Translations under genes and position numbers: made by a program
NCBI RefSeq assembly: GCF_000143415.4
Contig: NW_003314274.1
Location: 1,502,851-1,566,850 of the forward strand
Source of the DNA: Selaginella moellendorffii
Taxonomy: Eukaryota; Plantae; Lycopodiophyta
Direction: 5' to 3'
DNA: 64,000 nt
The notes under the pieces: generated by a model
What the model was told of the DNA's origin: nothing
What the model saw: only the letters and a program-made list of their open reading frames with translations
Databases searched by the model: none
Shown: positions 31,236-63,720 of the stretch, piece after piece
Numbering within the stretch: position 1 is the stretch's first letter
Layout: every line of letters begins with the position of its first letter

Positions 31236-33008
31236 ATGGCTGCCACAGCCGCAATTGGCCTGTGCTCTTCGATTGGCTCGATAACGGAGGTTTGCAGCAG
31301 CTCCAGCAGCTCCAGAATTGTGGAGGTCGCAAGGATTGGCTGCATCCATCGAGATTTTGGTAGATTTCCCAGGAAGGCTGTGCTCGTGAGAGCTTGCTCC
31401 ATTGGTGGAGGAGGAGGAGACGCTCGTCTTCCTCCCAGTCACAGGGCCAAGGCTGCGAGTTTGGCAGCTCTAGAACAGCTCCGAAATGCCGGCGCCGACA
31501 GTAAGTTTAGCTTTCCTGTTTTTTTTTTCTCGTGAGCTGATAAGATTGGATTGGATTGTGTTCTTGGCAGGATACACTAGCGAGAAGAGCAGCATTCTAG
31601 TGATAGGATTGAGCGTCCACACAGCTTCGGTGGAGCTACGTGAGAAGTTGGCCGTGCCAGAGGCGGAATGGCCACGCGCTATCGGCGAGCTCGTCTCTCA
31701 CAACCATATAGAGGAGGCGGCGGTTTTAAGTACGTGTAATCGCATGGAGATTTACGTGGTGGCTCTCTCGTGGCACCGTGGTGTCAAGGAGGTGACCGAG
31801 TGGATGTCCAAGGTGAGCTCTCAAGTTCTTGGTGCTAGAGTCTTAAAAACTTCCTTTTGTATTGGTAGACTAGTGGAGTTCCTCTGGAAGAACTCCGGCA
31901 GCATTTGTTCATACTACGCGACCGGGACGCGACGCAGCATTTGTTCAAGGTGTCGTCCGGATTGGACTCGCTGGTGCTGGGCGAGGGGCAGATTCTCGCG
32001 CAAGTCAAGCAGGTGTTCAAGGTCGGGCAGGGTGCCAACGGATTCGGCAGGAACTTGAATGGGCTCTTCAAGCAGGCGATCACGGCTGGCAAGAGAGTCC
32101 GGACGGAGACGAGCATTGCGGCCGGGGCGGTGTCGGTGAGCTCCGCGGCGGTGGAGCTAGCAGCGATGAAAGTTGCGAGCTATGGAGGGCTCTCCGCGGC
32201 TCAAGTCGTGATCGTCGGTGCCGGGAAGATGTCCAAGCTGCTCGTCAAGCACCTCATCTCCAAAGGCTGCACCAAGATGGTGGTCGTCAACAGGACGCAG
32301 CAGCGCGTGAGCGAGCTCCAGGCCGAGTTTCCAGACTCCACGCTCGAGTACCAGCCTCTGGACGAGATGATGAGATGTGCCGGGGAGGCCGACGTTGTCT
32401 TCACGAGCACAGCGTCAGACCAGCCACTCTTCTACAAAGATGACGCTGAGAAGATCCCGGCTGCTCCTTTGGGAACCAGGTTCTTCATCGATATCTCGGT
32501 CCCTCGAAACGTTGCGGCCTGTGTTGCCGAGGTCCCCTCCGTCAGGCTCTACAATGTGGACGACTTGAAAGAGGTGGTGGCCGCCAACCAGGAAGAGAGG
32601 AGGAGGAAGGCCATGGAAGCCCAGACCATCATCGAGGAGGAGCTGCGGAGCTTCGAGGCGTGGAGGGACTCGCTGGAGACGGTGCCGACGATAAAGAAGC
32701 TGCGAGCTTACGCGGAGAGGATCCGGACGAGCGAGCTGGAGAAGTGCCTGGCGAAGATGGGAGGCGACGAGTTGTCCAAGAAGAACAGGAAGCTCATCGA
32801 GGACCTCAGCCGGGGAATCGTCAACAAGCTGCTCCACGGGCCCATGCAAAACTTGAGAAGCGATGGCAGTGACGCCAGGACGGTGAACGAGACGCTGGAA
32901 AACATGCACGCTCTAGAGAGGATGTTTGATCTCAAAGCCGAGCTTGGTGGTCCCCTGGAGCTCAGATCCGCCAAGCAGCCCCCACCAGCAGCACCACCTT
33001 CCAGCTGA
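31236..33008 (+). CDS. HEMA: Glutamyl-tRNA reductase, chloroplastic (3 exons)
   Basis: Transit peptide; [78 protein letters not shown]. Confidence 0.98.
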
Positions 33009-34798: not shown

Positions 34799-36252
34799 TC
34801 AATTGCTGTAGTAGCTATAGTCTTTAAGATCGGGCTGGAACCTTCGAAAGAGCTCGTTTCGGAACAAGTTCTTCATCGCAAGTCTCTTCATGTAGATGGG
34901 AACAAGTCGGTTTCGTCCACCTTCTGGAGCTGGGAACAAGTACGCGTGGCCGTCTCCCAAGAGTGGTTGGAACGTGAAGGAGTTGTGAATAAGCGTTCCC
35001 CATCCGAAGTTCACCTCGAAGATCGGGAAGTTGACCATGCTCGTGCTCTGCACGTCGGCTCCAGAGTAGAAGTCGCAGGCAAAACCGATGTCTCTGTCGT
35101 TCTTCTGAAGCTCAATCTCCATCCAGTCTATCACCGACTTGAGGTACTCCGTCGTTGTGGCTGAGAGGTCGTCGTAGATGAGCTTTGCAGCGTAGGAGAC
35201 GTGCTTATCCTTGATGTCCCCGGCTTTAGCTGCTAATGACGAAATATGAGCCGTGTTTCCAAAGAAGCCGCGAGGAAGAGGTGGCTGCCAGCGCTGTCTG
35301 CAGCTTATCGGGTAGACATATCGAGTTGTGGTGTCGTCCGGGAGCTCTCTGGCTTCGGTCATCACCTTCCAGGTGAATGCCGCCATTGCAACGAAGCTGG
35401 AGGCTTCGACCTTCCAAGGACCGTTTCTGACCTCCTGGATGATTTCGTCCACCTGTTGAGCTGTGAACCTGAAGGTGATAGCTTGGTATGGCGATGGAGC
35501 TCCTTCCTCAAAGATCTGATAGTTGCTGCTGAGAGAGCCTTCAGCCTTGGGAACTGAAATGTAGTCCTTAATGGGAACACTCACCACTGGTGGATCTCTG
35601 GCTTTCATCAGGTGATTTGCAAACACTGGCGGAGTTGACACTGGAAGATGCGTATGAAGTTCCGACCATGATTTTACAAACTCCATCGCAGCCCAGCCAT
35701 CGTGAATTGCATGGGCCATACTAAATCCCAGAGCGATCCCTCCACACTTGAAGAGGGTCGCCTGGAAATAAAATCAGCGAGCTTTAAAAGAAGTTTCGAG
35801 TCTGTTAATTTTACCTGAGTTCGTATGAGTGGAGCGGTGTTGTAGTCCGCTATGATTGTATCTTCAAATGTCAGCTTGGCTTCTATGGTGCAATCCTTGA
35901 TGTCTTCCCAGTCATCGAATCTTGCCTCGGTAACTGCCTCGCGAAAAATAACTCCCTCGTCATTCAGCTCGACTTCGAATCTGTTATTCTCGTTCTTCAC
36001 CAGCCTCCCTGCGAGAGCTGGATAGTAAATCAATAACCTCGACAATGAGTCCTTTAATCCTTTGAAAAAAGCATCCTGGTCTTGAATCAAATGATCCGAA
36101 GCTGGCTTGAAGTACCACACGGTGTTCATGTACCACTGGCCTGTAAACACCTGATCTAAATTCGAAAGGAAACGTCGTTCCTGAATTGGTGTTGGAGATG
36201 CCGGGACGATAACAGAGGTGCACTTCAGATCGACTCCCCATAGAGCTCCCAT
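34799..36252 (-). CDS. BAHD (HXXXD-type) acyltransferase, copy A (2 exons)
   Basis: LSNLDQ, YYPALAGRL, Q|ATLFKCGG, HAIHDG, GFFGN, NFGWG; single intron about 35762-35814. Confidence 0.95.
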
Positions 36253-40334: not shown

Positions 40335-41790
40335 TCAATCGCTGTAGTAGCTGTAGTCTTTAAGACCGGGCTGGAACCTTCGAAAGAGCTCGTTTCGGAA
40401 CAAGTTCTTCATCGCAAGTCTCTTCATGTAGATGGGAACGAGTCGGCTTCTTCCACCTTCTGGAGATGGGAACAAGTAGGCGTGGCCGTCTCCCAAGAGT
40501 GGCTGGAACGTGAAGGAGTTGTGAATAGGCGTTCCCCATCCAAAATCCACCTCGAAGATCGGGAAGTTGACCATACTCGTGCTCTGCACGTCGGTTCCAG
40601 AGTAGAAGTTGCAGGCAAAACCGATGTCTCTGTCGTTCTTCTGAAGCTCAATCTCCATCCAGTCTATCACCGACTTGAGGTACTCCGCCGTTGTGCACGA
40701 GAGGTCGTCGTAGATGAGCTTTGCAGCGTAGGAGACGTGCTTATTCTTGATGTCCCCGGCTTTCGCTGCTAACGACGAAAGATGAGCCGTGTTTCCAGCA
40801 AAGCCGCGAGGAAGAGGTGGCTGCCAGCGCTGTCTGCAGCTTATCGGGTAGACATATCGAGTTGTGGTGTCGTCCGGGAGCTCTCTGGCTTCGGTCATCA
40901 CCTTCCAGGTGAATGCGGCCATTGCAACGAAGCTGGAGGCTTCGACCTGCCAAGGACCGTTTCTGACCTCCTGGATGATTTCGTCCACCTGTTGAGCTGT
41001 GAACCTGAAGGTGATAGCTTGGTATGGCGATGGAGCTCCTTCCTCAAAGACCTCATAGTTGCTGCTGAGAGAGCCTTCAACCTTGGGAACTGATATGTAG
41101 TCCTTAATGGGAACACTCACCACTGGTGGATCTCTGGCTTTCATCAGGTGACTTGCATACACCGGAGGAGTTGACAGTTGAAGATGCGTATGAAGTTCCG
41201 ACCATGACTTTACAAACTCCACCGCAGCCCAGCCATCGTGAATTGCATGCGCCATACTAAATCCCAGAGCGATCCCTCCACACTTGAAGAGGGTAGCCTG
41301 AAAAGAAAATCAGCGAGCTATACAAGCAGAAGGTTCGAGTCTATTCATTTACCTGAATTCGTACGAGTGGAGCACTGCTGTAGTCCGCTATCACTGTATC
41401 TTCAAATGTCAGCTTGGCTTCTACTGTGCAGTCCTTGATGTCTTTCCAGTCATCGAATCTTGCCTCGGTAACTGCCTCGCGAAAAATAACTCCCTTGTCA
41501 TTCAGCTCGACTTCGAATCTGTTATTCTCGTTCTTCACCAGCCTCCCCGCGAGAGATGGATAGTAAATCAATAACCTCGACAATGAGTCCTTCAATCCTT
41601 TGAAAAAAGCATCCTGGTCTTGAATCAAATGATCCGAAGCTGGCTTGAAGTACCACACGGTGTTCATGTACCACTGGCCTGTAAACACCTGATCTAAATT
41701 CGAAAGGAAACGTCGTTCCTGAATTGGTGTTGGAGATGCCGGGACGATAACAGAGGTGGACTTCAGATCGACTCCCCACAGAGCTCCCAT
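40335..41790 (-). CDS. BAHD (HXXXD-type) acyltransferase, copy B (2 exons)
   Basis: Close paralogue of 34799-36252; HAIHDG and canonical DFGWG; ATG at 41790. Confidence 0.95.
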
Positions 41791-41903: not shown

Positions 41904-44439
41904 TCATGTACGAAGTACAGCACCATCAGTAATTCTCCAGCCAGCATCTCCGTAATGAAGTTCATATCTTGTAGTGTAAGAGCTTTTGTATGAATCGTTG
42001 CGTTGGGGATTGTTGCTATCATAGAGCCGAGCAGTTTCTTCAAGAGTGGCCTCCACCATAGCTCGTCTACCGTCCTCGCTAATAGTCACACTGTCTATAT
42101 TTATCTCCAGAAGCTTGTATTCCCAATACCATCCATGTTTTGCTACTTCGACAGCCCGATCAGTCCAGCTCTTCAGCATCTGGCCGTCGAGTATCTGCTC
42201 ACAGAAAGTACCAATGTTATTAGTACGCAAGCAAGAGCATATATCCACATGTACCTCGTTAAGTTGAGTGATGCCACGGGTCACTCCAAGCGCCTTGGCT
42301 TTTGCAGCCTGCCATTTTCGTATCAACTGCTCTGCTAGCCTTGCATCCATTCTTAAGACCTCCTTCTGTTCGGTTGTACCTACAGGTAAGAAAACAATCG
42401 AAAAAAGCTCCACCCAATCTGCACACAACATACCTTTCCTTAAAGTCATCGCAGACGTAAGTGCTGGCACGAGAGGTGCCACTCTCCAGCTTTTGAGGAC
42501 CTTCTGGAAGGGTGGATAACTGACGCTTGCGATTGCCAGCCCTCCAAACACAGCAGCAATGCAGGCGATCTGCAGAGGAAGTAAACGGTTGCTTGAATGC
42601 TTAGTAACACCTTCTCCGAGACGTGCAATAGCAGCAGCAGCCTCTTGTGGAAAGCTTCCTTTCTCAAGCTTTTCCAGGTATCCAAGCACCTCTGCGTCGT
42701 CGTAGTAGTCACTTAGAGAGACGTGAAAGTCTGCCGTTTCTCGAAAGTTTGTAAAAACCTCCTCGGCCAACCAGCTTTCCAACAATTTGCAAAGCCCTGG
42801 AAGCAGGTCACTGTCCCCGTTGCCATCTGTGCCTGATAACACAAAATCTGCGACTTCGGGACACCTATCTGGAGAGTTGACATCGTTCAGCCCGAGGAAA
42901 TTTTTGCAGTTCTCCACTTCCCCAAGCAAAAGAGCGGATAGAGCCCGTCCAAGCATCACATCTCTTTGCTCGTCCGTAATAAGATGATTGTCATTTCTGT
43001 CACCCAAGCTCTGGTGCAGCTGAGTGAACAAGCTTCCACCCTCTTGAATCAGCCGAGGCTTCTTCGTCTTAAATCCTTCAGCAACATGCGCTAAAGCGGC
43101 CGAGTAGATCTCAAGCTTCTCTGCTGGTATATTCGTAGGAGTCTCTGTGAACAGCGCCACCTTGATGAATAAAGCTGTCAATTAGAAATAAATCACACTG
43201 AAGAATAAGTTTGGGTAAAAATGAAGTACCTGCTCGCATGCAGTCATGCGAGATAGTGCCTCTTTCATGAATTGCTCACGCGTGTATCCTCCCACTGGTG
43301 CCATTAGACCTCCTTCGCCAGCGGTCCAGAGAATGTTACGGACTTCTTGAAGCCCTTCCGAACGTTGCGACTTGTGTTCTTCGTCAAGAGGCAGCGCAAG
43401 GAGCTCCAAAACACAGCGAGGTGTGATCTCTTCTAGAGTCTCGTATACTTCTTCCTGTAAAGACGGTGCTAGCATATTTCCTCCAGCCTGCCAAAATCAG
43501 TATTTAGAAAGCGGAAAGATAAATAAAAAAGACTAAGCATACCTGTAGAAGCCTCAAAGCCCCGTTCAGCATGTCACAACTTCGAATGACGGCAGGAGGA
43601 TTTTCAGTCATTGCCTCCCTTGATAACTCAACATAAGCCAAAGCCGTCACGAGCACAACATCTTGCTTAAATGGCTTCTTCAAATTCTCATCGAGTAGAG
43701 CTTCACCGACTTGCAAAACCACTTCGGCCTCGCCCGCTTCTTGAAGAAGGCACAATGCTGCTGGTATCTGCAAAATTGCGTCAGTCGAGGACGAGAACAA
43801 ACACTAGATTGTTTTACTTACTTTGCTCCAAGGAACTTCCACAACCAGAGTTCCAGCCTCGTCTTCTTTCAAGCCATGGTCATACTCGTCACGAAGATCT
43901 CTGTCAGCCAGTGTATCACACGCGACTTTTAAGATTTGCTGTCGCGCTTTCAGAAGCTCCACGCTGAATCCCTCGGTGGGAGGGTTGCTTACGCGAGCTT
44001 CGTATGCTCTCATCACAGCATCGGTGGAGAAATGTGGCTCTGCTCCAAGAATCTTTATCAGACAAAAAAACGTCATCACCACAAAGACTACTTTGGAAGA
44101 AAATAAAGAGTTTGTCTCACTTGGTAGTAGTCGATGGGAAGCTGCATGGATTTCTCTGCATTTCGCAGCGCCACGGAAGGCTGAGCCTGTGCTAGAGCAC
44201 AAATCACCGATACTTTACTTCGCTTTTGCAAGCGCAGAGGATTGCTCGTCGCAATGCCCGCTTCTAGACTCTGGCCAGCAATCCTGAACGGCAATGCGCG
44301 CACCGGAGCCCGAGGCTTGCTCCCGGGGCGGCTTCCAAATGCTGGAGCAGCGATCGACACCTGCGCCGCGAGGAATGTAAACCCTACCTCGGAGAATCAC
44401 AAGAAATACCTGGACGCGAGCCGCCTGGCAGGGCGCCAT
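41904..44439 (-). CDS. ARC6: Plastid division protein ARC6
   Basis: LPIDYYQ|ILGAEPHF J-like domain, VEVPWSK|IPAALCLLQEAGE, LEEITPRCVLELLALPL, C-terminal MDARLAEQLIRKWQ...WYWEYKL...ATLEETA...SYTTRYEL. Confidence 0.95.
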
Positions 44440-52167: not shown

Positions 52168-54486
52168 TCATCTGACCGTACAGAGGTTGGACATCACGAC
52201 GTACGCCGAGGAGTGGCCATGGTCCAAGCTCCGGGCCTTTTGGGCTGTCCGTACACCCCGGTGTACGTCACCGTGGATGTGGCAAGCGCCCAAGAGGCTC
52301 ATCCATTGGGCGGGAGATGGCCAAATGGGCATGGTTTGAATGAGCTCCTCAACCCTATCGAGGCGCCCAGCGCGGCCGAGAAGATCGACGAGGCAGCCAT
52401 AGTTGTCCTCCAGTGGCTCGATAGAGTAGTCCCCGATCATGAGATGGAACTGGCGGCGGGCCTCTCGGATCGATCCGGCATGCGCGCATGCGAAGAGCAC
52501 ACAGGTGAAGCTTATCACATTCGGCGCCACGCCCTCTTGATCCATTCTTTGCAGTAGGTCCATCGATTCGCGCAGGTCACCCTGGTGAGCGTAGGCCCCG
52601 ATGATCGCGTTCCAGGAGATGGAGTTCTTGCCCCGGATCTCCTCGAACGCCGCCCTCACGCTGGCGGGGGCGCCGCAGCGATCATACATGTTGACTAGCG
52701 CGGTGCCCGGGATCACGCTGCTTGAGAGCCCCTTGGCGGCGATGGCGGCATGGATCTTCCGCCCTTCTCGCAGGTCCTCGCACGCATCCAGCGCGCTCAC
52801 CAGCGTCAGCTGGTTGGGATGGATCCCTTGGAGCTCCATTCTACTCAGTAGCAGCAGGGCTTGATCACCGTGACCCTGGTGAGCGCAAGCTGTGATCATC
52901 GACGTCCACGGGATCACATCGTCCCTCCGCTCGTCGCCCATTCGATCGAATACTCTCCAGGCGCTCTCGATGCTACCGCAGTTGCCATACATGTCAATGA
53001 GCGCCGTCTCCACGCTTTGGGACTCGTGGATTCTATTGCTCTGATCGTATTCTTCGTGGATCCTCCTCCCTTCCTCGATCAATTCCGGCGTGTTTGACAC
53101 CGCCTCCAGCACGCTCAAGAACGCGATCTCGTCGGGCTTCGTCCCTTCCGCGTCCATTTGCTTGAAGATCTGGAGAGCTCTCCGGGGGAATCCATGCTGG
53201 GCATACGCGGCGATCAGCGACGTCCACGACACGATCGTCCTGCACTGCAACGAATTGAAGACGCTCTCGGCATCGATCAAGCTCCCGCATTTGCCATACA
53301 TCGTCACCAGCGCATTGCTCAACCGGGTGGAGCTCTCGTCGATCACTCCACTGCCCGCGGCGGCGATCCTCTCGTGAATTCTCCTCCCATCCTCCAGGAA
53401 CTCCGCGCTGGAGCAAGCGCTCAGCGCAGTCAAGAATGTGTTCTCCATCGCCCTCACGCCTTCGCAATCCATGAGCTTGAGCAAACGCAGCGCTTCCTTG
53501 GCCTTCCCATGCTGAGCATGAGCTCCAATCAGAATGCCCCACGTCACCCCGTTCCTGTACGGCATGCCCACGAATACCGCCATGGCCTCGTCCAGGCTGC
53601 CGCACCGCCCGTACGTGCTCACCAGCGTGTTCCCGATTAGGGCTTCACGCTCGAGGCCGCGAGCGGCGAGGTCGCCATGGAGTCTCTTCACCGAATCGAT
53701 CGATTCGCAGGTTACAAGACTGCTCAAGAACGTCGATCGATCGGGCGCCAGCCCCGCGGGTTCGATCCGGTAATACAGCTCCAGCGCTAGATCTCCACGG
53801 CCGTGAAGAGAATACGCTGCGATCATCGCGTTCCAGGCGATAATATCCCGCTTTCTCATCCGGTCGAAGAGATCCCGAGCTCGATCGAGGCCGCCGCACC
53901 TGGCATACATGCTCACCAGCGCCGTGCCGAGATTTCCACTCAGATCGAACCCGCTTGCCTCGATCCGGGCGTGGAGGCGCTCACCCCGGGCGAGATCCAT
54001 TGCCAGGGTGCAGGCGCCCAGGAGATTGATAAACGTGACATGGCTGGCCTTGACGCCGTGGAGATCCATGCTTCCGAGAAGATCCAGCGCCTCTCGCAAA
54101 TGCCCATTCTCGGCATACGCAGTGACGAGAATGCTCCAGGAGAAGACGTTTGGATGCTCGATGGACTCAAATGCGGCGATGGCGTCGTCCAGAGCTTCGC
54201 ATTTCCCGTACATTCTCACGAGGAGATTCCCGAGAATGGTGTCGCCGCCGGCGCCCGCGCTGTTGATCTGGGCGTGGAGGCGCTTGCCCTGCGGGAGATC
54301 TCTGGAGCTTGCGCAGGCGCGAAGGAGATCCATGTAGGTGGAGAAATCCGCAGCAACTCCTCGCTTCTCGAGGCGATCCAGCCTCTCGCTAACATCACTG
54401 TGGCTCGGTCTCGCGGCTCTATCTCCATATCCAGCGCAAGAGCAGAAAAACCTTCTTGCTCTTCCCGAGACACGTCTTTGCAACAT
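52168..54486 (-). CDS. PLS-class PPR protein with truncated E domain, no DYW; intronless
   Basis: Repeated MYGKCG/VSWT/FLSVL motifs; ends YGCLVDLLGRAG...WMSLLGACHIHGD...SAYVVMSNL. Confidence 0.95.
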   Translation of the reverse strand: MLQRRVSGRARRFFCSCAGYGDRAARPSHSDVSERLDRLEKRGVAADFSTYMDLLRACASSRDLPQGKRLHAQINSAGAGGDTILGNLLVRMYGKCEALDDAIAAFESIEHPNVFSWSILVTAYAENGHLREALDLLGSMDLHGVKASHVTFINLLGACTLAMDLARGERLHARIEASGFDLSGNLGTALVSMYARCGGLDRARDLFDRMRKRDIIAWNAMIAAYSLHGRGDLALELYYRIEPAGLAPDRSTFLSSLVTCESIDSVKRLHGDLAARGLEREALIGNTLVSTYGRCGSLDEAMAVFVGMPYRNGVTWGILIGAHAQHGKAKEALRLLKLMDCEGVRAMENTFLTALSACSSAEFLEDGRRIHERIAAAGSGVIDESSTRLSNALVTMYGKCGSLIDAESVFNSLQCRTIVSWTSLIAAYAQHGFPRRALQIFKQMDAEGTKPDEIAFLSVLEAVSNTPELIEEGRRIHEEYDQSNRIHESQSVETALIDMYGNCGSIESAWRVFDRMGDERRDDVIPWTSMITACAHQGHGDQALLLLSRMELQGIHPNQLTLVSALDACEDLREGRKIHAAIAAKGLSSSVIPGTALVNMYDRCGAPASVRAAFEEIRGKNSISWNAIIGAYAHQGDLRESMDLLQRMDQEGVAPNVISFTCVLFACAHAGSIREARRQFHLMIGDYSIEPLEDNYGCLVDLLGRAGRLDRVEELIQTMPIWPSPAQWMSLLGACHIHGDVHRGVRTAQKARSLDHGHSSAYVVMSNLCTVR

Positions 54487-55192
54487 CAATCCATTGAGAT
54501 CCTATGACCTTATCAGATTGAAAGAGAGAATCCCGCACTTCAATCCCTCTTGTTGTGGCCACAGATATTGGAACCATTCAATGTTGTTGCAGTTGCCCAT
54601 GCGGGAACAAATGATATTTCTTAGGACATAAAGCAGCTACCTTTGGGATTGCAAGTCAGCACCTCAGGTTGATTGAAAGTGAGAATCCCACACCTATCCC
54701 CGCAGAACTTGGAGGCGGGGTTTGATGAAAGTGTGGAAGTGCTTGATCTGGAGATCGCAGCTCCGGCAGCAAAGCTTTGTACGATTCGCGCTGCCCGGCT
54801 AGAAATTCATAGGCATTCTAGGCTCATTTAGCCGCTGAAAATGTTAAATAATATTTAATATCAGACCTATTGGCTCAGCTGGACAATTGTAAACCTCGTG
54901 TTATTCCTCTATGTTTCAAGCAGTTTTGTTTCCTGCTGGCTATATGATTCTTGATGAGGTGTTGTGTGGTTTTTCTTGGTGATCATGCAGGAAATTATTG
55001 AGTTCGATTATAATTATTTGACGTAAAATAGAAAAATAATGATTAAAAATGACCAATAAATTCTTAATTATCAAAATAAAATCCAAAATAAGCATCTTTC
55101 AATAATGACACAATAATACAAAATAATAATAATGAACATATACTTTATATAAAGCATGTAGCTTCCAATAATTTACTTATACACTTTCAGAA

Positions 55193-56171
55193 ATGACTAA
55201 TTTTTTTATTTATGTTTTTTTATTTACTAGTATTTTTCCCTTCACTAATTCTCAAGTTGATCCATGTCAACATGACTCAGATTGTATTTCAGGTTATCAC
55301 TGCGATAATGCTAATTGTGTCAAAAACAAATCATGTTTTCCAGGTATAGTTCACTTTATCATATTCGTAGCCCTAATTTTATTACTAGGTGATGCTATTT
55401 TAAAGCTTTCTAATGGTAAACGAAAACAAATAAAGGATATTTCAATTGGTGATAAGGTTTGTAAGATTAATCACTTAATTTTACTCTTAACTGTTGTAAT
55501 TAGGTTGCAATCCGAAATAAAGATGGAAAAATAGATTATTCTGATATATATGCTTTTGGACATAAAGATATTGAGCCTTATGAAGAATTTATTCATATTA
55601 ATACTGAAAATAATAAGAGCATTGAGTTATCTAGTTTACATTTTATACCAACTAAAAGTAAGAATTTTTATTTACTATTTCATGCATCATATTCCTAATA
55701 ATCCATTTTAGATTCAAAATCAATACTATATAAGTATGCAAAGGATATTACTTTTGCAGATACTTTATTAGTTTTGGATGAGCAATCAGGAGAACTATTA
55801 CCTAATAATATATCAGGTAAGTATTAATTTTCAGTTTTTTATTTTTAATTAATTCATCTTTAGATATTTATATATCAAAAAAATATGGCCTTTACAATCC
55901 ATTTACATTGTCTGGAGATTTAATTGTAAATGATATTGTAGTATCAACTCACAGTGATTGGTTTTTAGATGAGATATTTGAATATTTAAAACTAAGCTAT
56001 TTATTACCTGATATATATCATAATTTTTTATTTCCAATTCAATTACTATATAGATATTTAAATATTGATATTTATTTAAAATTATACAACTTAGTGGACA
56101 CCATGGTTAATAATATTAGCTCTATTATGGTAGTTGCTGCTTTATCAATGTTTATTAAGAAACAAAAGTAA
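55193..56171 (+). CDS. Secreted Cys-rich peptide fused to a Hedgehog-type Hint/Hog autoprocessing domain (5 exons, 261 aa)
   Basis: Exons 55193-55343, 55389-55456, 55504-55657, 55712-55816 and 55864-56171, all with GT-AG introns, join in frame: signal peptide-QVDPCQHDSDCISGYHCDNANCVKNKS-CFPGDAILKLSNGKRKQIKDISIGDKV...YSDIYAFGHKD...IELSSLHFI...YAKDI...GLYNPFTLSGDLIVNDIVVSTHS...HNFLFPIQLLYRYL. Confidence 0.9.
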
Positions 56172-56243
56172 AGATAATAAAATAGTTAATAAAAAATAAA
56201 GCAGAAATAATAAGATAATTCTAATTAATAATTAATTTTTAAA

Positions 56244-56347
56244 TGTGTGTGTGTATGTGTGTGTGTGTATATATATATGTATGTATGTATACATATATAT
56301 ATATATGTATGTATATATATATATGTATGTATATATATATATGTATG

Positions 56348-56380
<33 letters not shown>

Positions 56381-56387
56381 GAATATG

Positions 56388-56420
<33 letters not shown>
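56244..56420. repeat. Compound microsatellite (TG)n/(TA)n/(TATG)n/(CT)n
   Basis: Visible dinucleotide and tetranucleotide runs. Confidence 0.95.
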
Positions 56421-56421
<1 letters not shown>

Positions 56422-58005
56422 AAAAAAAAATTCTTTGTGAGTTTTGAATGGATTAATTAATTACATAAATTTTATATTTTATTTCAGTAGTAATGTTTAG
56501 AAAATAAAGGAAAACAATAGTTATGGCAAGCAAAATATGATGGGAGTATTAATATGAGAATATTTATTTTTTATTTTGTATACAAGGATGTTTTGATTGT
56601 TATAATAGCAATCTAAACGTGATTGTATCCATGACACACAAGACTGCCACATAAGCCAATTAAGAAAAAAAGGCTTTCTCTCTCTTAAGTGATTCTAGTG
56701 ATCACATGTGGATCTAGTGTAAGTTGTGTTTCCAATGCTACTGTCAGAACAAGATTTTTTAGTTAGTTCTTCCTTCTGCAAGACATCTTGCTCCACATGG
56801 AGTTGTCATATGAAGAATTTATACAAGGCACTAATATGTATGCTTGTGTTCACGTTGAATTTCTTGGGTCAAGTCCACTAGTGACTGATAATCAAGCTTG
56901 GTGGGCATGATCTTCTTCCAAACACTCATCCTCTTGGCCAGGGCCTTGCTCTGGCCTTGCTGCAGTGGATGGAATCACAATCGCTCTATACAAATAGAAT
57001 TTAGTATCATGAGATCACTTTGATGGAATGGTTCTTTCCATCCATATGTTATTGTGGCAGAACTCCCACAATCTTGATCAGCTCTCCTCTTGGAATAGCA
57101 AAATCTTGCACCTTACTTTCAATCTTATTGTTACATATTCCTTGAGATTTAGCATCATCAAAAGGCCATGATTTCAATATGCAGCATTTGATTCCAGGAA
57201 AAAAGAAAACAAAACCATTCAAACATAATGTTCATACTAATGTATACCCATGTCTACAAAAATGATGTATCCAAAGATTATTTGGTGAGTCATACAGTGT
57301 GTTTAAACAATTCAAACATGTGTGTTTTAAATTGATTTTATCTTGCAATATAATTGATTTGCAGTGTGTTATTTGTAAAATAGGTGTCTATATATCTGAA
57401 TGAAACCCTGCAACTTCAAACATACAAACTTTATACAGTGGTCACTTGCCACAAGTACTGGACACCCCAATATATTCCACCAATCCTTTGGTAGGAATAT
57501 GCTGAGGATCCAATAGCCATTCCATAGTCATCCAATAAGATGGGATGGTTAGAATCATAGCCCATACATGCCATTGATATTCATGCCTTTGATTTAGGTT
57601 ATTTAGTCAATCATGGTCATAGACTTCTTTAGCAGTTGCAATCCCTTTCATAAATGCATTGATATAAGTGTCAAAAGACATGAAAATGTTGTTTGGATTA
57701 TCATTGGTTTGCAGTGCCAAATCTCACCTTTACCTATAGTTTTTGTGATATAAATAGTTTTTTTCATTATATTCTTAAAAACTTTTAGTAGTACTCTCTC
57801 TCTATTCATGAAGTAGATATTGAAGAACTTTAAAGTCTTTATCTATTGTTTGCATGGAAAGATTAATTTTGCAATGTTGTAAATTATATCATTTGGAGTT
57901 TTATTCACTACCAAAGTAACATATGTGTAATTGAGAAAAATGAAATACAATTTTTGTTATAGTCTCTAACCACTCTTTTGTACTGCAATTATCTATAATA
58001 CATAC

Positions 58006-58181
58006 TGTGATTGCTTGGAATATGGAAAGGGAATATAAAAAATGTGTATATTAATTAGCCCAAAAACCCTAATTTATATACAGGAGCAAGTGGTCCAAAT
58101 TGAAACCAATCCGATGGCTACCAAAATCCCATTATGGTAATATTAGTATACGGCATTATAACCGTACGCTTGGACCTCACA
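58006..58181 (-). repeat. 3' LTR of the Gypsy element (polypurine tract adjacent at 58182-58197)
   Basis: TG...CA ends; homologous to 62805-62978; minus-strand GAGAGGAGGGGATGA immediately precedes it. Confidence 0.9.
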
Positions 58182-61100
58182 TCATCCCCTCCTCTCGGAA
58201 TAATGGAAGACTATTAGGGTTCTCTTGTATATGGCCCAAGATTTGGAGGAACATCAGGAGGAAGCATTGGCGGATTTGTAGGTGGTCTCAGTTGTTCTTA
58301 ATCCCTTTGTATAAAGCGTTTCAATTGTTACACATGCACAATTTCTGGAGGATTAACCTGCTAGATGTCATGCTAAACCTCATAAACTTGTAATCCAACT
58401 TGCCACAACACCCAATACTGTCCTTTCCACTGAGCAAACAACCCCTTAGATAAACCACGTACCATAAGATGGGGAAAATGGACTAACACCAAGTCATTCA
58501 CTTTGTACTTTACAGATGGATGATGATGGGAGTTGTAGTGCCATTGTTGTCCCACTTATATACGGCTTAAGTGTTTCACAAACTTTGTTCGGACAAATAG
58601 AAGAACGCTTGTCAAATACTAATCTCACGACCTAGCATTAGCAACTCATGACAATCGCAAAGGTAAACTCAGCTCTATTGGTAAAATTGGATCATGACCA
58701 TATAAAATTTTATATGGTGAAGCACTAATAGAACTTTGCACCCCTATAACATATATATACTGAAGAAACGGCAAATAACTATCCCAATCTAAATCTTGAA
58801 AGTTCACGTACTTTGCGATCATTCCTTTGAATGTCCAAATGAGCTGTTCCACCAAACCGTATGACTGTGGATGATAAACACTCATGAAAGTGTAGTATAT
58901 CCCAACTGAGACGTCAAAACAGGAAATGCCTCAGCCATAAATGTGGGACCATTATTAAGAATGCTGAAACACCACTCGATTGAAGAGGAAGTATTCAATA
59001 GTAGTTGCAAAGGCACTAGCAAGAGCACCAACTTCCACCCAACAAGTCAAATAGTCAAAAGCAATAATAATATACTTATTGCCAATAGTTAATTGTGGAA
59101 AAGATCCTATAAGATTAAATGCCACCAACTCAAATGGATGGGAAATTGCAATTGACCCCAACCATCCTTTTCCAGCACGAAAGGGAATATTACGAGCTTG
59201 GCACCAAACACAGTTATGCACATACTGGATAACATCACATCGCATCTCTAGCCAATAAAAATATCTATGCAGTTTCTCGGTCACACGACGATGTCCCATA
59301 TGCCCACCTAGAATAGGAGAATCATGATAGGCATGGAGAAACCGTGGAATAAAGACAGAAGGCACTACCAGCCGTAAAGGATCATCAAGATCCATCCTAC
59401 AAAATATAAAAGGCCTTCTTCAAGGCAATACTAAGAATGTAAATGTTAGAATGGCAAGTCATAAACAAATGATATAAGATTCTCAAACCCATCACGAAGC
59501 CTTTGAATCCATAGCTTAAGTTTTTGAGGCTCATGAACCTCATCAAGATTAGGTAGATCTTGCTTTGCACATTGTGGACACTGAATATTAAATATAAAAT
59601 TGCCGATGGCACAAAATCCTTGTTTAGAAAATTCACAAATGCCAGAACAACAAGCTTGTCAAAAATATGAAAAGAGAGTGGAGAAGAAAGAGGAGCTCAA
59701 AAAAGGGCATCAACATCAGCCATAGAACTCCCTGGCCGATAAACAATATCAAAATCATATATCTGAAGCTTCAAAGCCCACCAAGTAGTACGACCAACCA
59801 GGTTCTTTCACTTCAATAATAAAGTAACTGCAGCATAATCACCTTCAAGTAACTAATGTCCGGAACCATGTACATATACATAAAATTTCTCAAAACCCCA
59901 AACTATTGCTAAACACTCCTTCTCTATCGTGGAGTAATTCACCTCCACTAGTTGTAATGCATGGCTTATATATACAATAGGATAGAGCTGACCAGGCACA
60001 TTTGGGCTCTCTCGCATCAACACACTTCCAACACCAATATCAAAAGCATCCACCTGCAAAATAAAAGGTCGAGTGTAATTAGGATATGCCAAAACCGGAG
60101 GAGTCATTAAGAGCTCATTAAAATCCATGAACACCCACTCACAATCCAAAGACCAGATGAAAGATGACGTTGATGACTTAAGCAATGCTCGCAATGGTGC
60201 GTGCAATAAGAAAGATGATCCACAAAATAAATGAGATATTGCGTCTTGCCTAGGAAGCACTGCACATCATTTACACACTTCAGAGTAGGGAACTTTAGAA
60301 CAGCCACATGTTTGTTAGGATCAACTTGCAAACCCTCACGAGAAACAGTACCCAAGATAAGTCATGTTCTTAGACCCAAACATGCATTTCGACCGCTTCA
60401 GCGTTAAATCAACATCCTATAGCCAATCTAACACTTTATAAACATCATGAATATGCTCCTCCAACATCCCTTCTGAGTGAATCAAGATATCATCAATGAA
60501 GTCAACAATCACCTCCAGTATATTGCAAAGAATCTCGTCCATCATCCATTGGAAAGTTATTGGAGCATTGTTCAAACCAAATGGCATTACCAAGAATTTG
60601 TACAAACCAAATAGTGTACTTAAAGCAGTCTTAAGAATATCTTTTTCAGCCATTGGTATTTGCTAGTACCCAAAAGCAAGATCTAGCTTGGTGAACCAAC
60701 AACTTCGCCCTAGACAATCCAAGAGATCAACAGTGTGAGGAAGAGGGTATATATCCAGGATCGTCACTTTATTTAACGGACAATAGTCGATGCAGAAACA
60801 AATTCTCCCATTAAGCTTTGTCACAAGATGAGGTTCATATGCCCAAGGATTTTGCAACTTTCGATTAACACCCTTCTCTAACATCTTCTTGACGTTTACA
60901 TGTAAAATCTTGATCTCTTTGGGTGACTAATGACGAACAGGAACCTTGATTGGACGAGCATCCCCAGTTGGAATCGAATGACATGTGGCAATCTTGGCCC
61001 CAGACGATAAGTCAAATTCAAAGAGATTAGAATACTCCTTCATGAGCCGGTCAACCGCTGCAACACAAAGATTGTCGGAGGGATAAAAAAAGGGAAGAGC

Positions 61101-62804
61101 AGAACAAAATGGAAATATACAAAGAAATAGTGTGGGGACAAAAGTAATAGAAGCAGAAGTAGAAGTAAACAAAGAGGTATAGAAGTGAGAGGAATGGATA
61201 AAATATAAGGAAGTATGAGACAAAGGGGAGAAGGCTCAAAATCACACTTGGCATAATTGTGCTGCAACCAATCCATATCAAAGATGAGGTCAAAAGCTTG
61301 ACTCAGCACCACCCGCAATGACTACAATCCAAGCTCGAGATCGCCCACATGCACAACCAAATCTACCTCATCCCGTGCACATACATGTGTACGGCCATTG
61401 CCATAAAGAATAAAAATTGGCTCCGTCGCATGACGCAAGTGTAGACAACAACGTGTGGCAACATGTCGAGCAATAAAGATAAACTCGAACTTGTATTAAC
61501 CAACATGGAGAGAATAACAGAAGACCTCTCATTATAAAAATGAGTTTAGAAAGTAAACACTATATAAATTGGTGCCAAGTGAACTCCTTGATGATACTCC
61601 CGAAAGAAAGATGAAGGGGTCACTAACTTATTCATGCAAGGTTCCTCTATTACTCGCGTGACTCCTTGTTTCCTAGATGCATCTCGGTATCCAAACCTTC
61701 CACTACAGCAGCACCAATAGGACATTGTTAACGCCAAGGTCTCCACCTAGGAAATGGAGGTTGCTAATCCAGAAAATGCTAACAAAACCGATAAGTATGG
61801 CCAACTTCATCACATACCCAAAAGCAAACATCATGGCCACAAACACATCTTCACCCTTGTCCTTGGACTTGAGCAGCAGCAACATTAACCTCCATTGAAA
61901 CAAGACCATCATCGCCCATAAGAAGTGGAGCGAAAGGACATGCAATGAGAAGTGGAAGAAGTGATGTTTCATAACATTGTGCCAAGATAAGAGCATTATC
62001 AAGGGTGGTTAGAGCAAGTGCATGTACAAGTCCGACAAGATCTTGACAAAGTGCTAGCCACAAAATTCCTAGCTTGATCTGCTCTAACATATTTGGCTTT
62101 GCACGGAGCAAGAGGCTTCAGAAATGAACACCAAATTGCATCATTGACTCAGATGGCCCTTGACAAAGACAATGCAATTGCTGGAAGGCACAATCACAAT
62201 CGTTGGCATATCCGAATGTGCATTTGAAGACGTTCAGGAGAACATTCCAACTGCACTCAAACCATTGTACCACTACAGTGCCATCCTTTCGAAACACGTG
62301 GGAAACTCACTCAAATGTCAAACATCATCCCAAGAATGAGAGGTGGCAATCACCATGAAATGTGATCAAACCAATAATACACATCATCCTTAGGATTCCC
62401 ACAAAAGAACTCTGGCTGAATGCAAGGATGGCACCAAGAGAAAGAGGAGTTGTACCATGTGACATGAATGCCACTATCAACTGAGTTTGATTGTTCAATT
62501 GCAATTGCATGGGATCAAGCAATTGCACCAACTATTGCTCTAGAGTCAGAAGAGGATATTGCTGCTCTGCCATGAAGATGAATAAAAAAGAAAAAGCAAA
62601 AGAAGGGAAATGAGGAAAAACTAGAAGGAAAGAAAGATTTAGACAATGGAAAAGCTAAATTTAAACCAAAATCTTGAAAGAAAAGAATAAAAGAAAGGAA
62701 ATGGAAAAAACTAGATCTAGACGATGCAAAAGTTAAATCTAAACCAAAATCCCAAATTCAAGCACTCCTCAGGGACAATGAAATATGCCCTTCAACTCCA
62801 TCAA

Positions 62805-62978
62805 TATGAGTTTAGAATATGGAAAGGGAATATAGAAAATGTGCATATTAATTAACCCAAAAACCCTAGCTTATATACAGGAGTGAATGGTTTGGATTGA
62901 AATTAATCTGACGGCTACCAAAATCCCACTACATTAATATTAATATATGGCATCGTAGTTGTACACTTGGACCTCACA
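62805..62978 (-). repeat. 5' LTR of the Gypsy element (degenerate PBS adjacent at about 62786-62804)
   Basis: GAATATGGAAAGGGAATATA...CCCAAAAACCCTA...GGCTACCAAAATCCCA...TTGGACCTCACA shared with 58006-58181; minus-strand TTGATGGAGTTGAAGGG follows. Confidence 0.88.
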
Positions 62979-63300: not shown

Positions 63301-63354
63301 GTAAATCAATTATTTGATGTGAAGTAACTAGTTCTACAAGGGATATTTTTGTTT

Positions 63355-63720
63355 GTGGATGGATGTTCAATATATAATTTTAAATTTAGGGGTAGAAATA
63401 TACATACTCAAGGCTATATTATATTTTAATGGCTACCTTTTTCCATGGATGGATGCTTAATATATAATTTAAGATTTAGGGGTAGAAATATGCCTACTCA
63501 AGGTTATATTATATTTTAATGGCTATATTTGTAGATGAATGCTCAATATATAATTTCAAATTTAGGGGTAGAAATATGCCTAATCAAGGGCATATTATAT
63601 TTTAATTAGCCATTAATCAATTTGGATGCTCAATACATATGATTTCAAATTTAGGGGTGGGAATGGATGTTCAATACATATGATTTAAAACTTAAAGGTA
63701 GAAATTTACCTTACTCAAAA
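63355..63720. repeat. Tandem repeat, about 88-bp unit (3 full copies plus partial copies)
   Basis: GGATG.TCAATATATAATTT.AAATTTAGGGGTAGAAATAT.C.TACTCAAGG.TATATTATATTTTAAT recurs at about 63360, 63450 and 63535, with shorter copies at about 63624 and 63665. Confidence 0.9.

What the first reader, a model, noticed from the sequence alone, without database searches (positions are those of the whole stretch)
55193..56171. Hedgehog-like self-cleaving precursor of a tiny secreted Cys-rich peptide in a plant
Seen in sequence: five exons separated by 45-54-nt GT-AG introns join into an intact 261-aa protein, which the ORF track shows only as two unrelated pieces. The architecture is a roughly 20-aa signal peptide, a 27-aa peptide QVDPCQHDSDCISGYHCDNANCVKNKS (C-x5-C-x5-C-x4-C), then CFPG and all Hedgehog Hint blocks: KxIKDIxIGDKV, YSDIYAF, the block-B His (LSSLHFI), YAKDI and GLYNPFTLSGDLIVNDIVVS. 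An SRR-like amphipathic segment (HNFLFPIQLLYRYL) and a hydrophobic tail follow. Established knowledge: Hedgehog Hog domains cleave before the CF cysteine and esterify a sterol to the released N-terminal fragment. Inference: this gene could release a roughly 3-kDa, disulfide-bonded, sterol-anchored extracellular peptide, a modification not known for plant signalling or defence peptides. I recall surveys reporting Hog-domain sequences in non-metazoans, including some non-seed plants (not verified here), but I know of no functional description of this minimal-peptide architecture.
Basis: partly seen in the sequence, partly recalled or inferred. Interest (0 to 1): 0.92.

Follow-up and report, generated by a model that had tools for sequence, protein, structure and literature searches.

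The report
Unannotated AT-rich Hog gene, Selaginella
This is a real, intact but unannotated and apparently silent spikemoss gene that joins a tiny four-cysteine secreted peptide to a Hedgehog-type self-cleaving domain; it is one more, unusually AT-rich, copy of a plant gene family reported in 2008 whose function is still unknown.

Summary
Five exons (55193-55343, 55389-55456, 55504-55657, 55712-55816, 55864-56171) join through four GT-AG introns of 45, 47, 54 and 47 nt into a 261-aa protein. It has a signal peptide, a 27-aa four-Cys peptide, CFPG, a complete Hint domain, a helical C-terminal region and a hydrophobic tail.

The window is Selaginella moellendorffii. The protein belongs to the lycophyte and moss Hog family, reported by Burglin in 2008. 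NCBI annotates at least 12 paralogs as 'warthog protein 4/6' or 'indian hedgehog B'. Some carry the same four-Cys cargo and share three intron positions with this gene.

What is particular to this copy:
- It is unannotated and only about 40% identical to any paralog.
- It is 25% GC (GC3 14.5%) and lies in a CpG-depleted AT island beside an old LTR element.
- It lacks 10-17 residues of a conserved C-terminal motif.

Three raw RNA-seq runs gave no reads, and 19 transcriptome assemblies held none of its words. The frame is open far beyond chance, and a second DNA sample has a 96.5% identical variant that differs more in introns than in exons.

Self-cleavage is plausible. Sterol attachment is untested: His replaces Asp46 and Thr replaces Cys143.

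Verdict: a new member of a known kind, of moderate to low interest. Other windows of this scan noted further Hog copies in the same genome.

The parts
55146..55153 (+). TATATAAA, a TATA-like box 40 nt upstream of the ATG (inferred promoter element)
   Evidence: Read directly from the sequence. No transcript evidence, so this is inference only.
55193..55343 (+). Exon 1: signal peptide (residues 1-20, 55193-55252), 27-aa four-Cys cargo peptide (residues 21-47, 55253-55333), the nucleophile Cys48 (55334-55336), then FP and the first base of Gly51
   Evidence: The intron falls at the same position and phase as in the paralog P0162 gene.
55344..55388 (+). Intron 1, 45 nt, GT-AG, phase 1 inside the Gly codon of CFPG
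55389..55456 (+). Exon 2: Hint N-terminal block (GDAILKLSNGKRKQIKDISIGDK)
55457..55503 (+). Intron 2, 47 nt, GT-AG, phase 0, at the same position as in P0162
55504..55657 (+). Exon 3: Hint blocks with YAFGH93KD (His at the Asp46 position) and ELS116SLH119F (the SxxH equivalent of TxxH)
   Evidence: Pfam PF01079 match, E 8.6e-5, profile positions 43-86. Residue mapping through the PDB profile alignment.
55658..55711 (+). Intron 3, 54 nt, GT-AG, phase 1; this intron is absent from the P0162 gene
55712..55816 (+). Exon 4: middle of the Hint domain (SILYKYAKDITFADTLL...)
55817..55863 (+). Intron 4, 47 nt, GT-AG, phase 1, at the same position as in P0162. It carries 6 of the 12 substitutions in the variant from the second DNA sample.
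55864..56171 (+). Exon 5: end of the Hint domain (GLYNPFTLSGDLIVNDIVVST188HS, with Thr at the Cys143 position, 55947-55949); helical SRR/ARR-like region (residues 189-242, 55950-56111); hydrophobic tail plus KKQK (residues 243-261, 56112-56168); stop codon 56169-56171
   Evidence: Pfam PF01079 match, E 1.3e-4, profile positions 133-162. phmmer found 318 hits. Alignments. Hydropathy.
54819..56776 (.). AT-rich (24.6% GC), CpG-depleted (observed/expected 0.31) island that holds the gene
   Evidence: GC profile

Best explanation
This is a genuine, intact, unannotated and highly diverged paralog of the land-plant (lycophyte and moss) Hog family in Selaginella moellendorffii.

Shown: the gene model, the family membership, the host genome and the compositional oddity.

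Inferred mechanism: the signal peptide takes the precursor into the ER, and the hydrophobic C-terminal tail probably holds it in the membrane. The Hint domain then performs an N-to-S acyl shift at Ser47|Cys48, assisted by the Ser116-x-x-His119 motif. A nucleophile resolves the thioester and releases a roughly 3-kDa peptide with four cysteines. That nucleophile may be a hydroxyl-bearing lipid such as a phytosterol, bound by the helical C-terminal region and activated by His93, or it may simply be water.

My odds: about 0.97 that this is a Hog-family gene of this plant; about 0.5 that this copy is expressed and functional somewhere in the life cycle; about 0.55 that it self-cleaves if it is made; about 0.25 that the adduct is a sterol.
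For: - Gene model: the frame is open with 0 stops, against 15-40 in the other frames.
- Pfam: colinear Hint matches on exons 3 and 5.
- Sequence similarity: the spliced protein against annotated Hint proteins gives E 5e-53 to S. moellendorffii P0162.
- Solved structures: a family profile that includes the window pieces matches Drosophila Hedgehog Hint over its whole length (6TYY 8e-22, 1AT0 3e-20), with Cys1 and the xxH motif aligned.
- Fold: the AlphaFold model of the P0162 Hog domain (pLDDT 91) matches 1AT0 and 6TYY best, at TM 0.85. It ends in five helices.
- Tree: the protein sits in a supported (98/94) clade of 28 rows that holds every labelled land-plant sequence (18 of the 28 rows; the other 9 were not identified).
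- Introns: all three introns of the P0162 gene are shared in position and phase.
- Conservation: 51 of 64 clade-conserved columns are kept, and most changes are conservative.
- Host: the neighbouring GluTR exon is 100% identical to SELMODRAFT_171031.
- Second sample: a second DNA sample of the species holds a 96.5% identical variant. It has 7 of 101 intron positions changed against 6 of 273 exon positions (Fisher p 0.049), and its only indel lies in an intron.
- Chemistry: D46H Hedgehog still autoprocesses (PMC12054796).
Against: - Expression: there were no RNA reads over 54963-57500 in three raw RNA-seq runs (about 12% of each was read), while the neighbouring PPR gene had depth 1-6. Nineteen RNA contig sets of the species held none of the sampled words.
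- Context: the gene lies in a CpG-depleted AT island next to a degenerate LTR element, which suggests methylated, silent chromatin.
- Divergence: it has a long branch (1.2) and skewed composition (FYMINK 42%).
- Losses: 10-17 residues of the conserved C-terminal VAEFG.K.GG motif are missing, depending on the alignment. Several conserved residues are changed non-conservatively: R133Y, R219Q and G226N.
- Catalysis: the Cys143 equivalent is Thr, and C143A/D abolishes processing in Sonic Hedgehog (PMC12054796).
- No Hog protein outside animals has been shown to transfer a sterol. A 2026 paper still calls their function unknown (PMC13353863).
Confidence: 0.6

Rival explanations
1. It is a silenced, dying paralog. 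In this reading, a Hog copy landed or was left in transposon-rich, methylated chromatin, has drifted towards AT, and is no longer expressed. The frame is still open only because constraint was lost recently.
For: There are zero RNA reads and no transcriptome words. CpG observed/expected is about 0.3, and GC is 25% at all codon positions and in the introns. An LTR element lies 1.8 kb downstream. The branch is the longest in its clade, and part of a conserved C-terminal motif is lost. Unchecked earlier notes describe clusters of decayed Hog genes among transposons in this genome.
Against: Zero stops in 261 codons at 25% GC is very unlikely after long neutral drift, since the shuffle minimum was 7 stops. 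All four splice-site pairs are intact. The catalytic Cys48, His119 and most invariant columns are kept. The variant in a second sample changes introns more than exons and keeps the frame.
Confidence: 0.3
2. The Hint domain does not cleave, or it only hydrolyses. In this reading, the protein is a type-I membrane protein that displays the Cys peptide, or it releases the peptide free without any lipid.
For: The Cys143 equivalent is absent (Thr188) and varies as T/V/S/C/A across the plant family. Asp46 is replaced by His. The C-terminal region gives no HMM-level match to the Hedgehog sterol-recognition region: the PDB and Pfam matches stop at the Hint core. A transmembrane-like tail is present that animal Hedgehog lacks.
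Against: Cys1, the xxH motif and the whole active-site scaffold are conserved in a family with very different cargos. This conservation makes sense only if cleavage at Cys1 matters. The D46H mutant of Hedgehog remains active (PMC12054796). Burglin 2008 reports the SRR motif K in plant Hog domains (PMC2362128).
Confidence: 0.3
3. The AT-rich block is foreign DNA: a contaminant, a misassembly or a recent horizontal transfer from an AT-rich organism.
For: There is a sharp GC drop from about 50-60% to 25% at about 54990. The introns are tiny. No contig in the second DNA sample bridges the boundary.
Against: Three intron positions and phases are shared with an S. moellendorffii paralog. The protein is placed inside the land-plant clade. 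Two independent DNA samples under the same species label hold the stretch. Eight AT-rich islands occur in this one window, so such islands are a feature of the genome. No terminal repeats flank the gene.
Confidence: 0.03

Closest known systems
S. moellendorffii annotated Hog paralogs: P0162 'warthog protein 6' (265 aa) and P0016 / XP_002985754 'indian hedgehog B protein'
   Same: They have the same architecture: a signal peptide, a four-Cys mini peptide ending in a ...G[FY].C.N..C....|CFPGDA-type motif, then the Hint domain, a helical C-terminal region and a hydrophobic tail. Three intron positions are the same. His stands at the Asp46 position, and there is no Cys at the Cys143 position.
   Different: Identity is only about 40%. 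This copy is 25% GC against 45% GC in the paralog gene. It has one extra intron and a 10-17-residue deletion in the C-terminal motif. It is unannotated and has no RNA support.
Plant Hog proteins of Burglin 2008 (pSm, pSl and pPp Hog; PMC2362128)
   Same: This is the same family. It has a Hog domain with motifs J and K, with the motif-J cysteine replaced by Ser, Thr or Asp. It also has a signal peptide and a short conserved upstream region.
   Different: That paper found one sequence per species. The present copy is a further, far more diverged locus.
Animal Hedgehog C-terminal autoprocessing domain (Drosophila HhC; PDB 1AT0 and 6TYY)
   Same: The Hint fold and sequence are homologous over all of about 145 residues. 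Cys1 follows the cargo, and the xxH motif and a helical C-terminal extension are present.
   Different: The cargo is a 27-aa peptide instead of the roughly 170-aa HhN domain. Asp46 is His, Thr69 is Ser and Cys143 is Thr. A transmembrane-like tail is added. Sterol transfer has not been shown.
Nematode warthog, groundhog and quahog proteins, and red-algal and other protist Hog proteins
   Same: They are secreted precursors with unrelated N-terminal cargos joined to a Hog domain. The families are multi-copy and the adduct is unknown. In Cyanidiophyceae the genes are subtelomeric and specific to a life-cycle stage (PMC13353863).
   Different: The cargo domains are different, and they form separate clades in the tree.
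Inteins and bacterial intein-like (BIL) domains
   Same: They share the Hint fold and an N-terminal Cys that performs an acyl shift. They are the next-best structural matches after Hedgehog.
   Different: There is no C-extein and no terminal Asn plus nucleophile. The protein simply ends after the tail, so splicing is impossible.

Membership tests
Hint module (Pfam PF01079) | A significant match to the family HMM | tested here: met
   The exon 3 piece scores 22.7 bits (profile positions 43-86) and the exon 5 piece 22.1 bits (positions 133-162). The matches are colinear. Each is below the 29.7-bit cut-off alone only because introns split the domain. The spliced protein scored locally against PF01079-annotated proteins gives E 5e-53.
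Hint module (Pfam PF01079) | An N-terminal nucleophile Cys at the cargo/Hint junction | tested here: met
   Cys48 in ...KNKS|CFPGDA aligns with Cys1 of 1AT0.
Hint module (Pfam PF01079) | The block B TxxH motif | tested here: met
   Ser116-Ser-Leu-His119 aligns with Thr69-x-x-His72. The His is kept, and Thr is replaced by the similar Ser.
Hint module (Pfam PF01079) | The Hedgehog/intein fold | tested here: inconclusive
   The fold was shown only for the paralog P0162, with the window pieces in the alignment: pLDDT 91, TM 0.85 and rmsd 2.3 to 6TYY and 1AT0.
Hog domain (Hint plus SRR/ARR, Burglin 2008) | Motif J at the end of the Hint domain | tested here: met
   VVSTHS aligns with VAASCY. The Cys is replaced by Thr, as Burglin reports for plant Hogs (PMC2362128).
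Hog domain (Hint plus SRR/ARR, Burglin 2008) | A C-terminal adduct/sterol-recognition region with motif K | tested here: inconclusive
   The family-conserved L.P[VI]R.LY appears here as LFPIQLLY. It resembles the Hedgehog LAPMRLL only at motif level. No HMM or PDB match extends past the Hint core. The region is helical in the paralog model.
Land-plant Hog clade | Phylogenetic placement with lycophyte and moss Hog domains | tested here: met
   The clade has support 98/94 and 28 rows, including 15 from S. moellendorffii plus Ceratodon and Diphasiastrum (9 rows not identified). The window protein has a long branch and lies outside the 14-row S. moellendorffii subclade.
Land-plant Hog clade | Shared gene structure | tested here: met
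   All three introns of the P0162 gene fall at the same position and phase as introns 1, 2 and 4 here.
Bona fide Hedgehog | An N-terminal Hedge (HhN) signalling domain | tested here: not met
   The cargo is 27 aa and matches no domain. The only hit is a weak sub-threshold one to Nodulin_late.
Bona fide Hedgehog | The catalytic residues Asp46 and Cys143 | tested here: not met
   His93 and Thr188 stand at these positions. D46H is tolerated but C143A/D is not in Sonic Hedgehog (PMC12054796).
Bona fide Hedgehog | Cholesterol esterified to the released N-terminal fragment | not testable with these tools
   This needs biochemistry and mass spectrometry.
Intein | A C-extein with a +1 nucleophile and a terminal Asn for splicing | tested here: not met
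   The protein ends at KKQK after the hydrophobic tail, so there is no C-extein.

The most novel reading that the evidence does not exclude
Land-plant Hog domains (His at position 46, no Cys143, transmembrane tail) may covalently attach a phytosterol or another membrane lipid to very small secreted cargos. These cargos include four-Cys peptides like this one, Pro-rich wall-type peptides and 4-6-residue stubs. That would create a class of lipid-anchored extracellular peptides in bryophytes and lycophytes that seed plants lost. This AT-rich copy would be a member specific to one life-cycle stage, for example the gametophyte, and so missed by annotation and by sporophyte RNA-seq.
Probability: 0.15. 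Interest if true: 0.8.

Novelty: new member of a known kind. Interest (0 to 1): 0.3.

Why it matters
Whether Hedgehog-type autoprocessing lipidates proteins outside animals has been an open question since 2008, and a 2026 paper still calls non-animal Hog proteins of unknown function. Selaginella has a sizeable Hog family with strikingly small and varied cargos, which makes it a good system for that question. This locus adds an unannotated member to the family. It shows that gene annotation misses AT-rich copies with tiny introns. It also offers a natural example of a coding frame held open under extreme AT drift. It is not the best copy for a first biochemical test, because expressed and annotated paralogs with the same architecture exist.

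Tried and rejected
- Exon 1 peptide against Pfam: only sub-threshold hits (Nodulin_late at E 0.002 and 18.7 bits against a 30.4-bit cut-off, carboxypeptidase A inhibitor, squash inhibitor). I attribute these to the signal peptide plus Cys spacing, not to homology.
- Closer relatives: phmmer of exon 5 against 1.84 billion representatives gave nothing above 55% identity. The word-indexed search of the same piece gave one hit at 49%. So no ortholog or annotated copy of this lineage is on record.
- Other copies in the window: tblastn of the spliced protein against the window found none.
- Transposon cargo: no direct or inverted repeats flank the gene. The only LTR-like pair (58015-58181 and 62812-62978) lies wholly downstream.
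- Exact look-up of the neighbouring PPR protein, to name the record: not on record. The organism was instead settled through the GluTR exon.
- Reads: the single read-laying run gave no RNA over the gene and only short DNA contigs. The four junctions and the continuity across the GC boundary therefore remain unconfirmed by reads.
I resent it without that row.
- Whole spliced protein: I did not hand the 261-aa protein to any remote tool, because it has no single reference. Whole-protein comparisons were run locally.
- SignalP: not available. The signal peptide call rests on hydropathy, the -3/-1 rule and alignment with paralog N-termini.

Full report
**Observation.** The region 55193-56171 is very AT-rich. 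The mechanical ORF list shows only two pieces on the + strand, 55193-55534 (113 aa) and 55908-56171 (87 aa). Joining the five exons gives a 786-nt CDS and a 261-aa protein.

| Exon | Coordinates | Following intron | Length |
|---|---|---|---|
| 1 | 55193-55343 | 55344-55388 | 45 nt |
| 2 | 55389-55456 | 55457-55503 | 47 nt |
| 3 | 55504-55657 | 55658-55711 | 54 nt |
| 4 | 55712-55816 | 55817-55863 | 47 nt |
| 5 | 55864-56171 | none | none |

All four introns are GT-AG. The CDS is 25% GC, with GC1/GC2/GC3 of 34/26/14.5%. The reading frame has no stop, against 15-40 stops in the other five frames. Shuffles gave a mean of 23 stops and a minimum of 7 in 20,000 trials. The open frame is therefore not chance.

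**Protein layout.**
- Residues 1-20: a hydrophobic signal-like N-terminus.
- Residues 21-47: a 27-aa acidic peptide with spacing C-x5-C-x5-C-x4-C, mass about 2981 Da, pI 5.2. It ends in the sequon N45-K46-S47.
- Residue 48: Cys in CFPGDA.
- Then a Hint domain, running to about residue 190.
- Then a region of about 50 residues that aligns with helices in the paralog model.
- Residues 243-258: a hydrophobic tail, with the protein ending in KKQK.

**Family assignment.**
- Pfam Hint (PF01079) matches the exon 3 piece (E 8.6e-5, profile positions 43-86) and the exon 5 piece (E 1.3e-4, positions 133-162) in colinear order.
- phmmer with the exon 5 piece against 1.84 billion representative proteins gave 318 hits at E up to 0.001. 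The best were 53-55% identical, and none was a self-match.
- The named hits are Hint-domain proteins of Selaginella moellendorffii (annotated 'warthog protein 4/6' or 'indian hedgehog B protein'), the moss Ceratodon purpureus and the lycophyte Diphasiastrum complanatum.
- A search with P0016 listed at least a dozen S. moellendorffii paralogs.
- Scored locally, the spliced protein matches these with E down to 5e-53 and aligns along its whole length.
- A family profile that includes the window pieces matches Drosophila Hedgehog Hint over all 144 residues (6TYY 8e-22, 1AT0 3e-20).
- An AlphaFold model of the Hog domain of the nearest annotated paralog, P0162, has pLDDT 91 and pTM 0.84. It matches 6TYY and 1AT0 best (TM 0.85, rmsd 2.3), ahead of inteins and BIL domains. 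It ends in five helices.
- The window protein itself could not be folded, because the spliced sequence has no single reference.

**Catalytic residues.** The positions were mapped through the alignments and named as in PMC12054796.

| Hedgehog residue | Here | Comment |
|---|---|---|
| Cys1 | Cys48 | kept |
| Asp46 | His93 | His in the whole plant family; PDB 6TYY is the D46H mutant, and D46H still processes in cells |
| Thr69 | Ser116 | similar residue |
| His72 | His119 | kept |
| Cys143 | Thr188 | varies as T/V/S/C/A in the family |

Cys143 forms a required branched intermediate in Hedgehog, and C143A/D abolishes processing. The plant family must therefore work without it, or may use a Ser/Thr oxyester as some inteins do. 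That alternative is my inference. Past the Hint core there is no HMM-level match to the Hedgehog sterol-recognition region. There is only a motif-level resemblance: the family pattern L.P[VI]R.LY, here LFPIQLLY, against the Hedgehog LAPMRLL. Burglin 2008 reports motifs J and K in plant Hog domains, with the motif-J Cys replaced (PMC2362128).

**Organism and origin.** The window also carries a PPR gene, ARC6, glutamyl-tRNA reductase (GluTR) and BAHD transferase exons. The GluTR exon is 100% identical over its full length to S. moellendorffii SELMODRAFT_171031, and the next best hit is 80%. The gene for P0162 (locus L001, GL377597.1) has three introns, and each sits at the same position and phase as introns 1, 2 and 4 here. 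Intron 3 is extra in this gene. In an IQ-TREE analysis of 60 Hog domains, the window protein falls in a supported (98/94) clade of 28 rows. That clade holds every labelled land-plant sequence. Nine of its rows I did not identify. The protein lies on a long branch (1.2) outside the 14-row S. moellendorffii subclade. Two DNA samples under the same species label hold the stretch. Contamination or transfer from outside plants is therefore very unlikely.

**What is unusual about this copy.**
- It is about 40% identical to any paralog.
- It is 25% GC, against 45% for the P0162 gene (GC1/2/3 of 52/43/47%).
- Its protein is 42% F/Y/M/I/N/K and 11% G/A/R/P, against 22-28% and 22-34% in relatives.
- It lies in an AT island (54819-56776, CpG observed/expected 0.31). 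Eight such islands occur in this window.
- The island starts about 500 nt from the divergent PPR gene. It lies 1.8 kb upstream of a degenerate LTR element, whose 167-nt LTRs are 83% identical at 58015 and 62812. No repeats flank the Hog gene itself.
- It keeps 51 of 64 columns conserved in the clade, and most changes are conservative. R133Y, R219Q and G226N are not.
- It lacks 10-17 residues of the VAEFG.K.GG motif before the tail, depending on the alignment.
- No closer relative exists in either large protein collection, so this lineage is unannotated.

**Expression.** None of 19 RNA contig sets of the species holds its sampled words. Three raw RNA-seq runs, each about 12% read, gave zero reads over 54963-57500. 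The PPR gene next door had depth 1-6 in the same runs. The four junctions therefore remain unconfirmed.

**Second DNA sample.** A DNA run from a second sample contains a 375-nt contig over 55533-55906 with 12 listed substitutions (the contig table counts 13) and one indel. The indel and six substitutions lie in introns. The six exon changes split three synonymous and three non-synonymous: T123I, D147G and S159T. That is 7 of 101 intron positions against 6 of 273 exon positions (Fisher p 0.049). This is weak support for constraint.

**Comparison with what is known.**
- Burglin 2008 already reported Hog sequences in S. moellendorffii, S. lepidophylla and Physcomitrella, with a signal peptide and a short conserved upstream region.
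- Cargos of the annotated S. moellendorffii paralogs vary widely: four-Cys peptides (P0162, P0016), Pro-rich wall-type stretches (P0023, P0160, P0164, P0165) and near-bare stubs such as TNTNNS (P0166).
- Relatives from unidentified organisms carry hevein-like modules.
- The motif G[FY].C.N..C....|CFPG is shared between this gene, P0162 and the Ceratodon protein.
- The 'minimal peptide plus Hog' architecture is therefore not new, but no functional study was found.
- A 2026 paper on red algae still describes non-Hedgehog Hog proteins as of unknown function, possibly lipid-modifying. It finds them to be multi-copy, subtelomeric and specific to a ploidy stage (PMC13353863).
- Other first-stage notes of this scan list further Hog copies in the same genome, including decayed clusters among transposons. 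I did not check those.

**Verdict.** The Hog assignment and the plant origin are supported. The claim of novelty is not, and sterol anchoring is an untested inference. It faces two non-canonical catalytic positions, and there is no expression evidence for this copy. My best reading is an intact, divergent, unannotated Hog paralog that would self-cleave at Ser47|Cys48 if made. The main rival is a silenced copy on its way to decay.

Noticed in passing
window 52168-54486 (-): An intronless 772-aa PPR gene lies divergent from the Hog gene. Its exact product is not on record. RNA reads on it carry many mismatches and a recurrent 'goes back 294' joint from 54109 to 53816, which probably comes from PPR paralogs or repeats.
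   Followed up: partly
window 34799-35719 (-) and 40335-41255 (-): Two 306-aa ORFs both match the BAHD 'Transferase' family (PF02458) over the same profile range. They look like a tandem duplicate pair flanking AT-rich islands.
   Followed up: no
window 31905-33008 (+) and 41904-43181 (-): A glutamyl-tRNA reductase exon is 100% identical to S. moellendorffii SELMODRAFT_171031. There is also an ARC6 plastid-division exon. Both are ordinary nuclear genes, and the first fixes the organism.
   Followed up: yes
window 56236-56439: A compound microsatellite of TG, TATG, TA and CT units followed by an A run lies about 65 nt (stop at 56171, repeat from 56236) downstream of the Hog stop codon. The read tool skipped it as a repeat.
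   Followed up: no
window 58015-62978: A degenerate LTR retroelement is flanked by 167-nt direct repeats (83% identical) at 58015-58181 and 62812-62978. It is CpG-depleted.
   Followed up: partly
window 63338-63603: Three tandem copies of a 90-nt unit (79-83% identical) lie in an AT-rich block at the end of the window.
   Followed up: no
L001 1155-1990 and 3001-3969: In S. moellendorffii scaffold GL377597.1, two Hog genes sit in tandem and are followed by a PPR gene. The first copy is 95-97% identical to P0162 in exons 2 and 3 but only 72% in exon 1. This suggests the cargo evolves faster than the Hog domain.
   Followed up: partly
window 56157-56168 and 55325-55333: The protein ends in KKQK, which fits the KKXX dilysine ER-retrieval pattern but is not conserved in paralogs. 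The cargo ends in an N-K-S glycosylation sequon directly before the cleavage Cys, and short-cargo paralogs also end in sequons (TNTNNS, TNTTG).
   Followed up: partly
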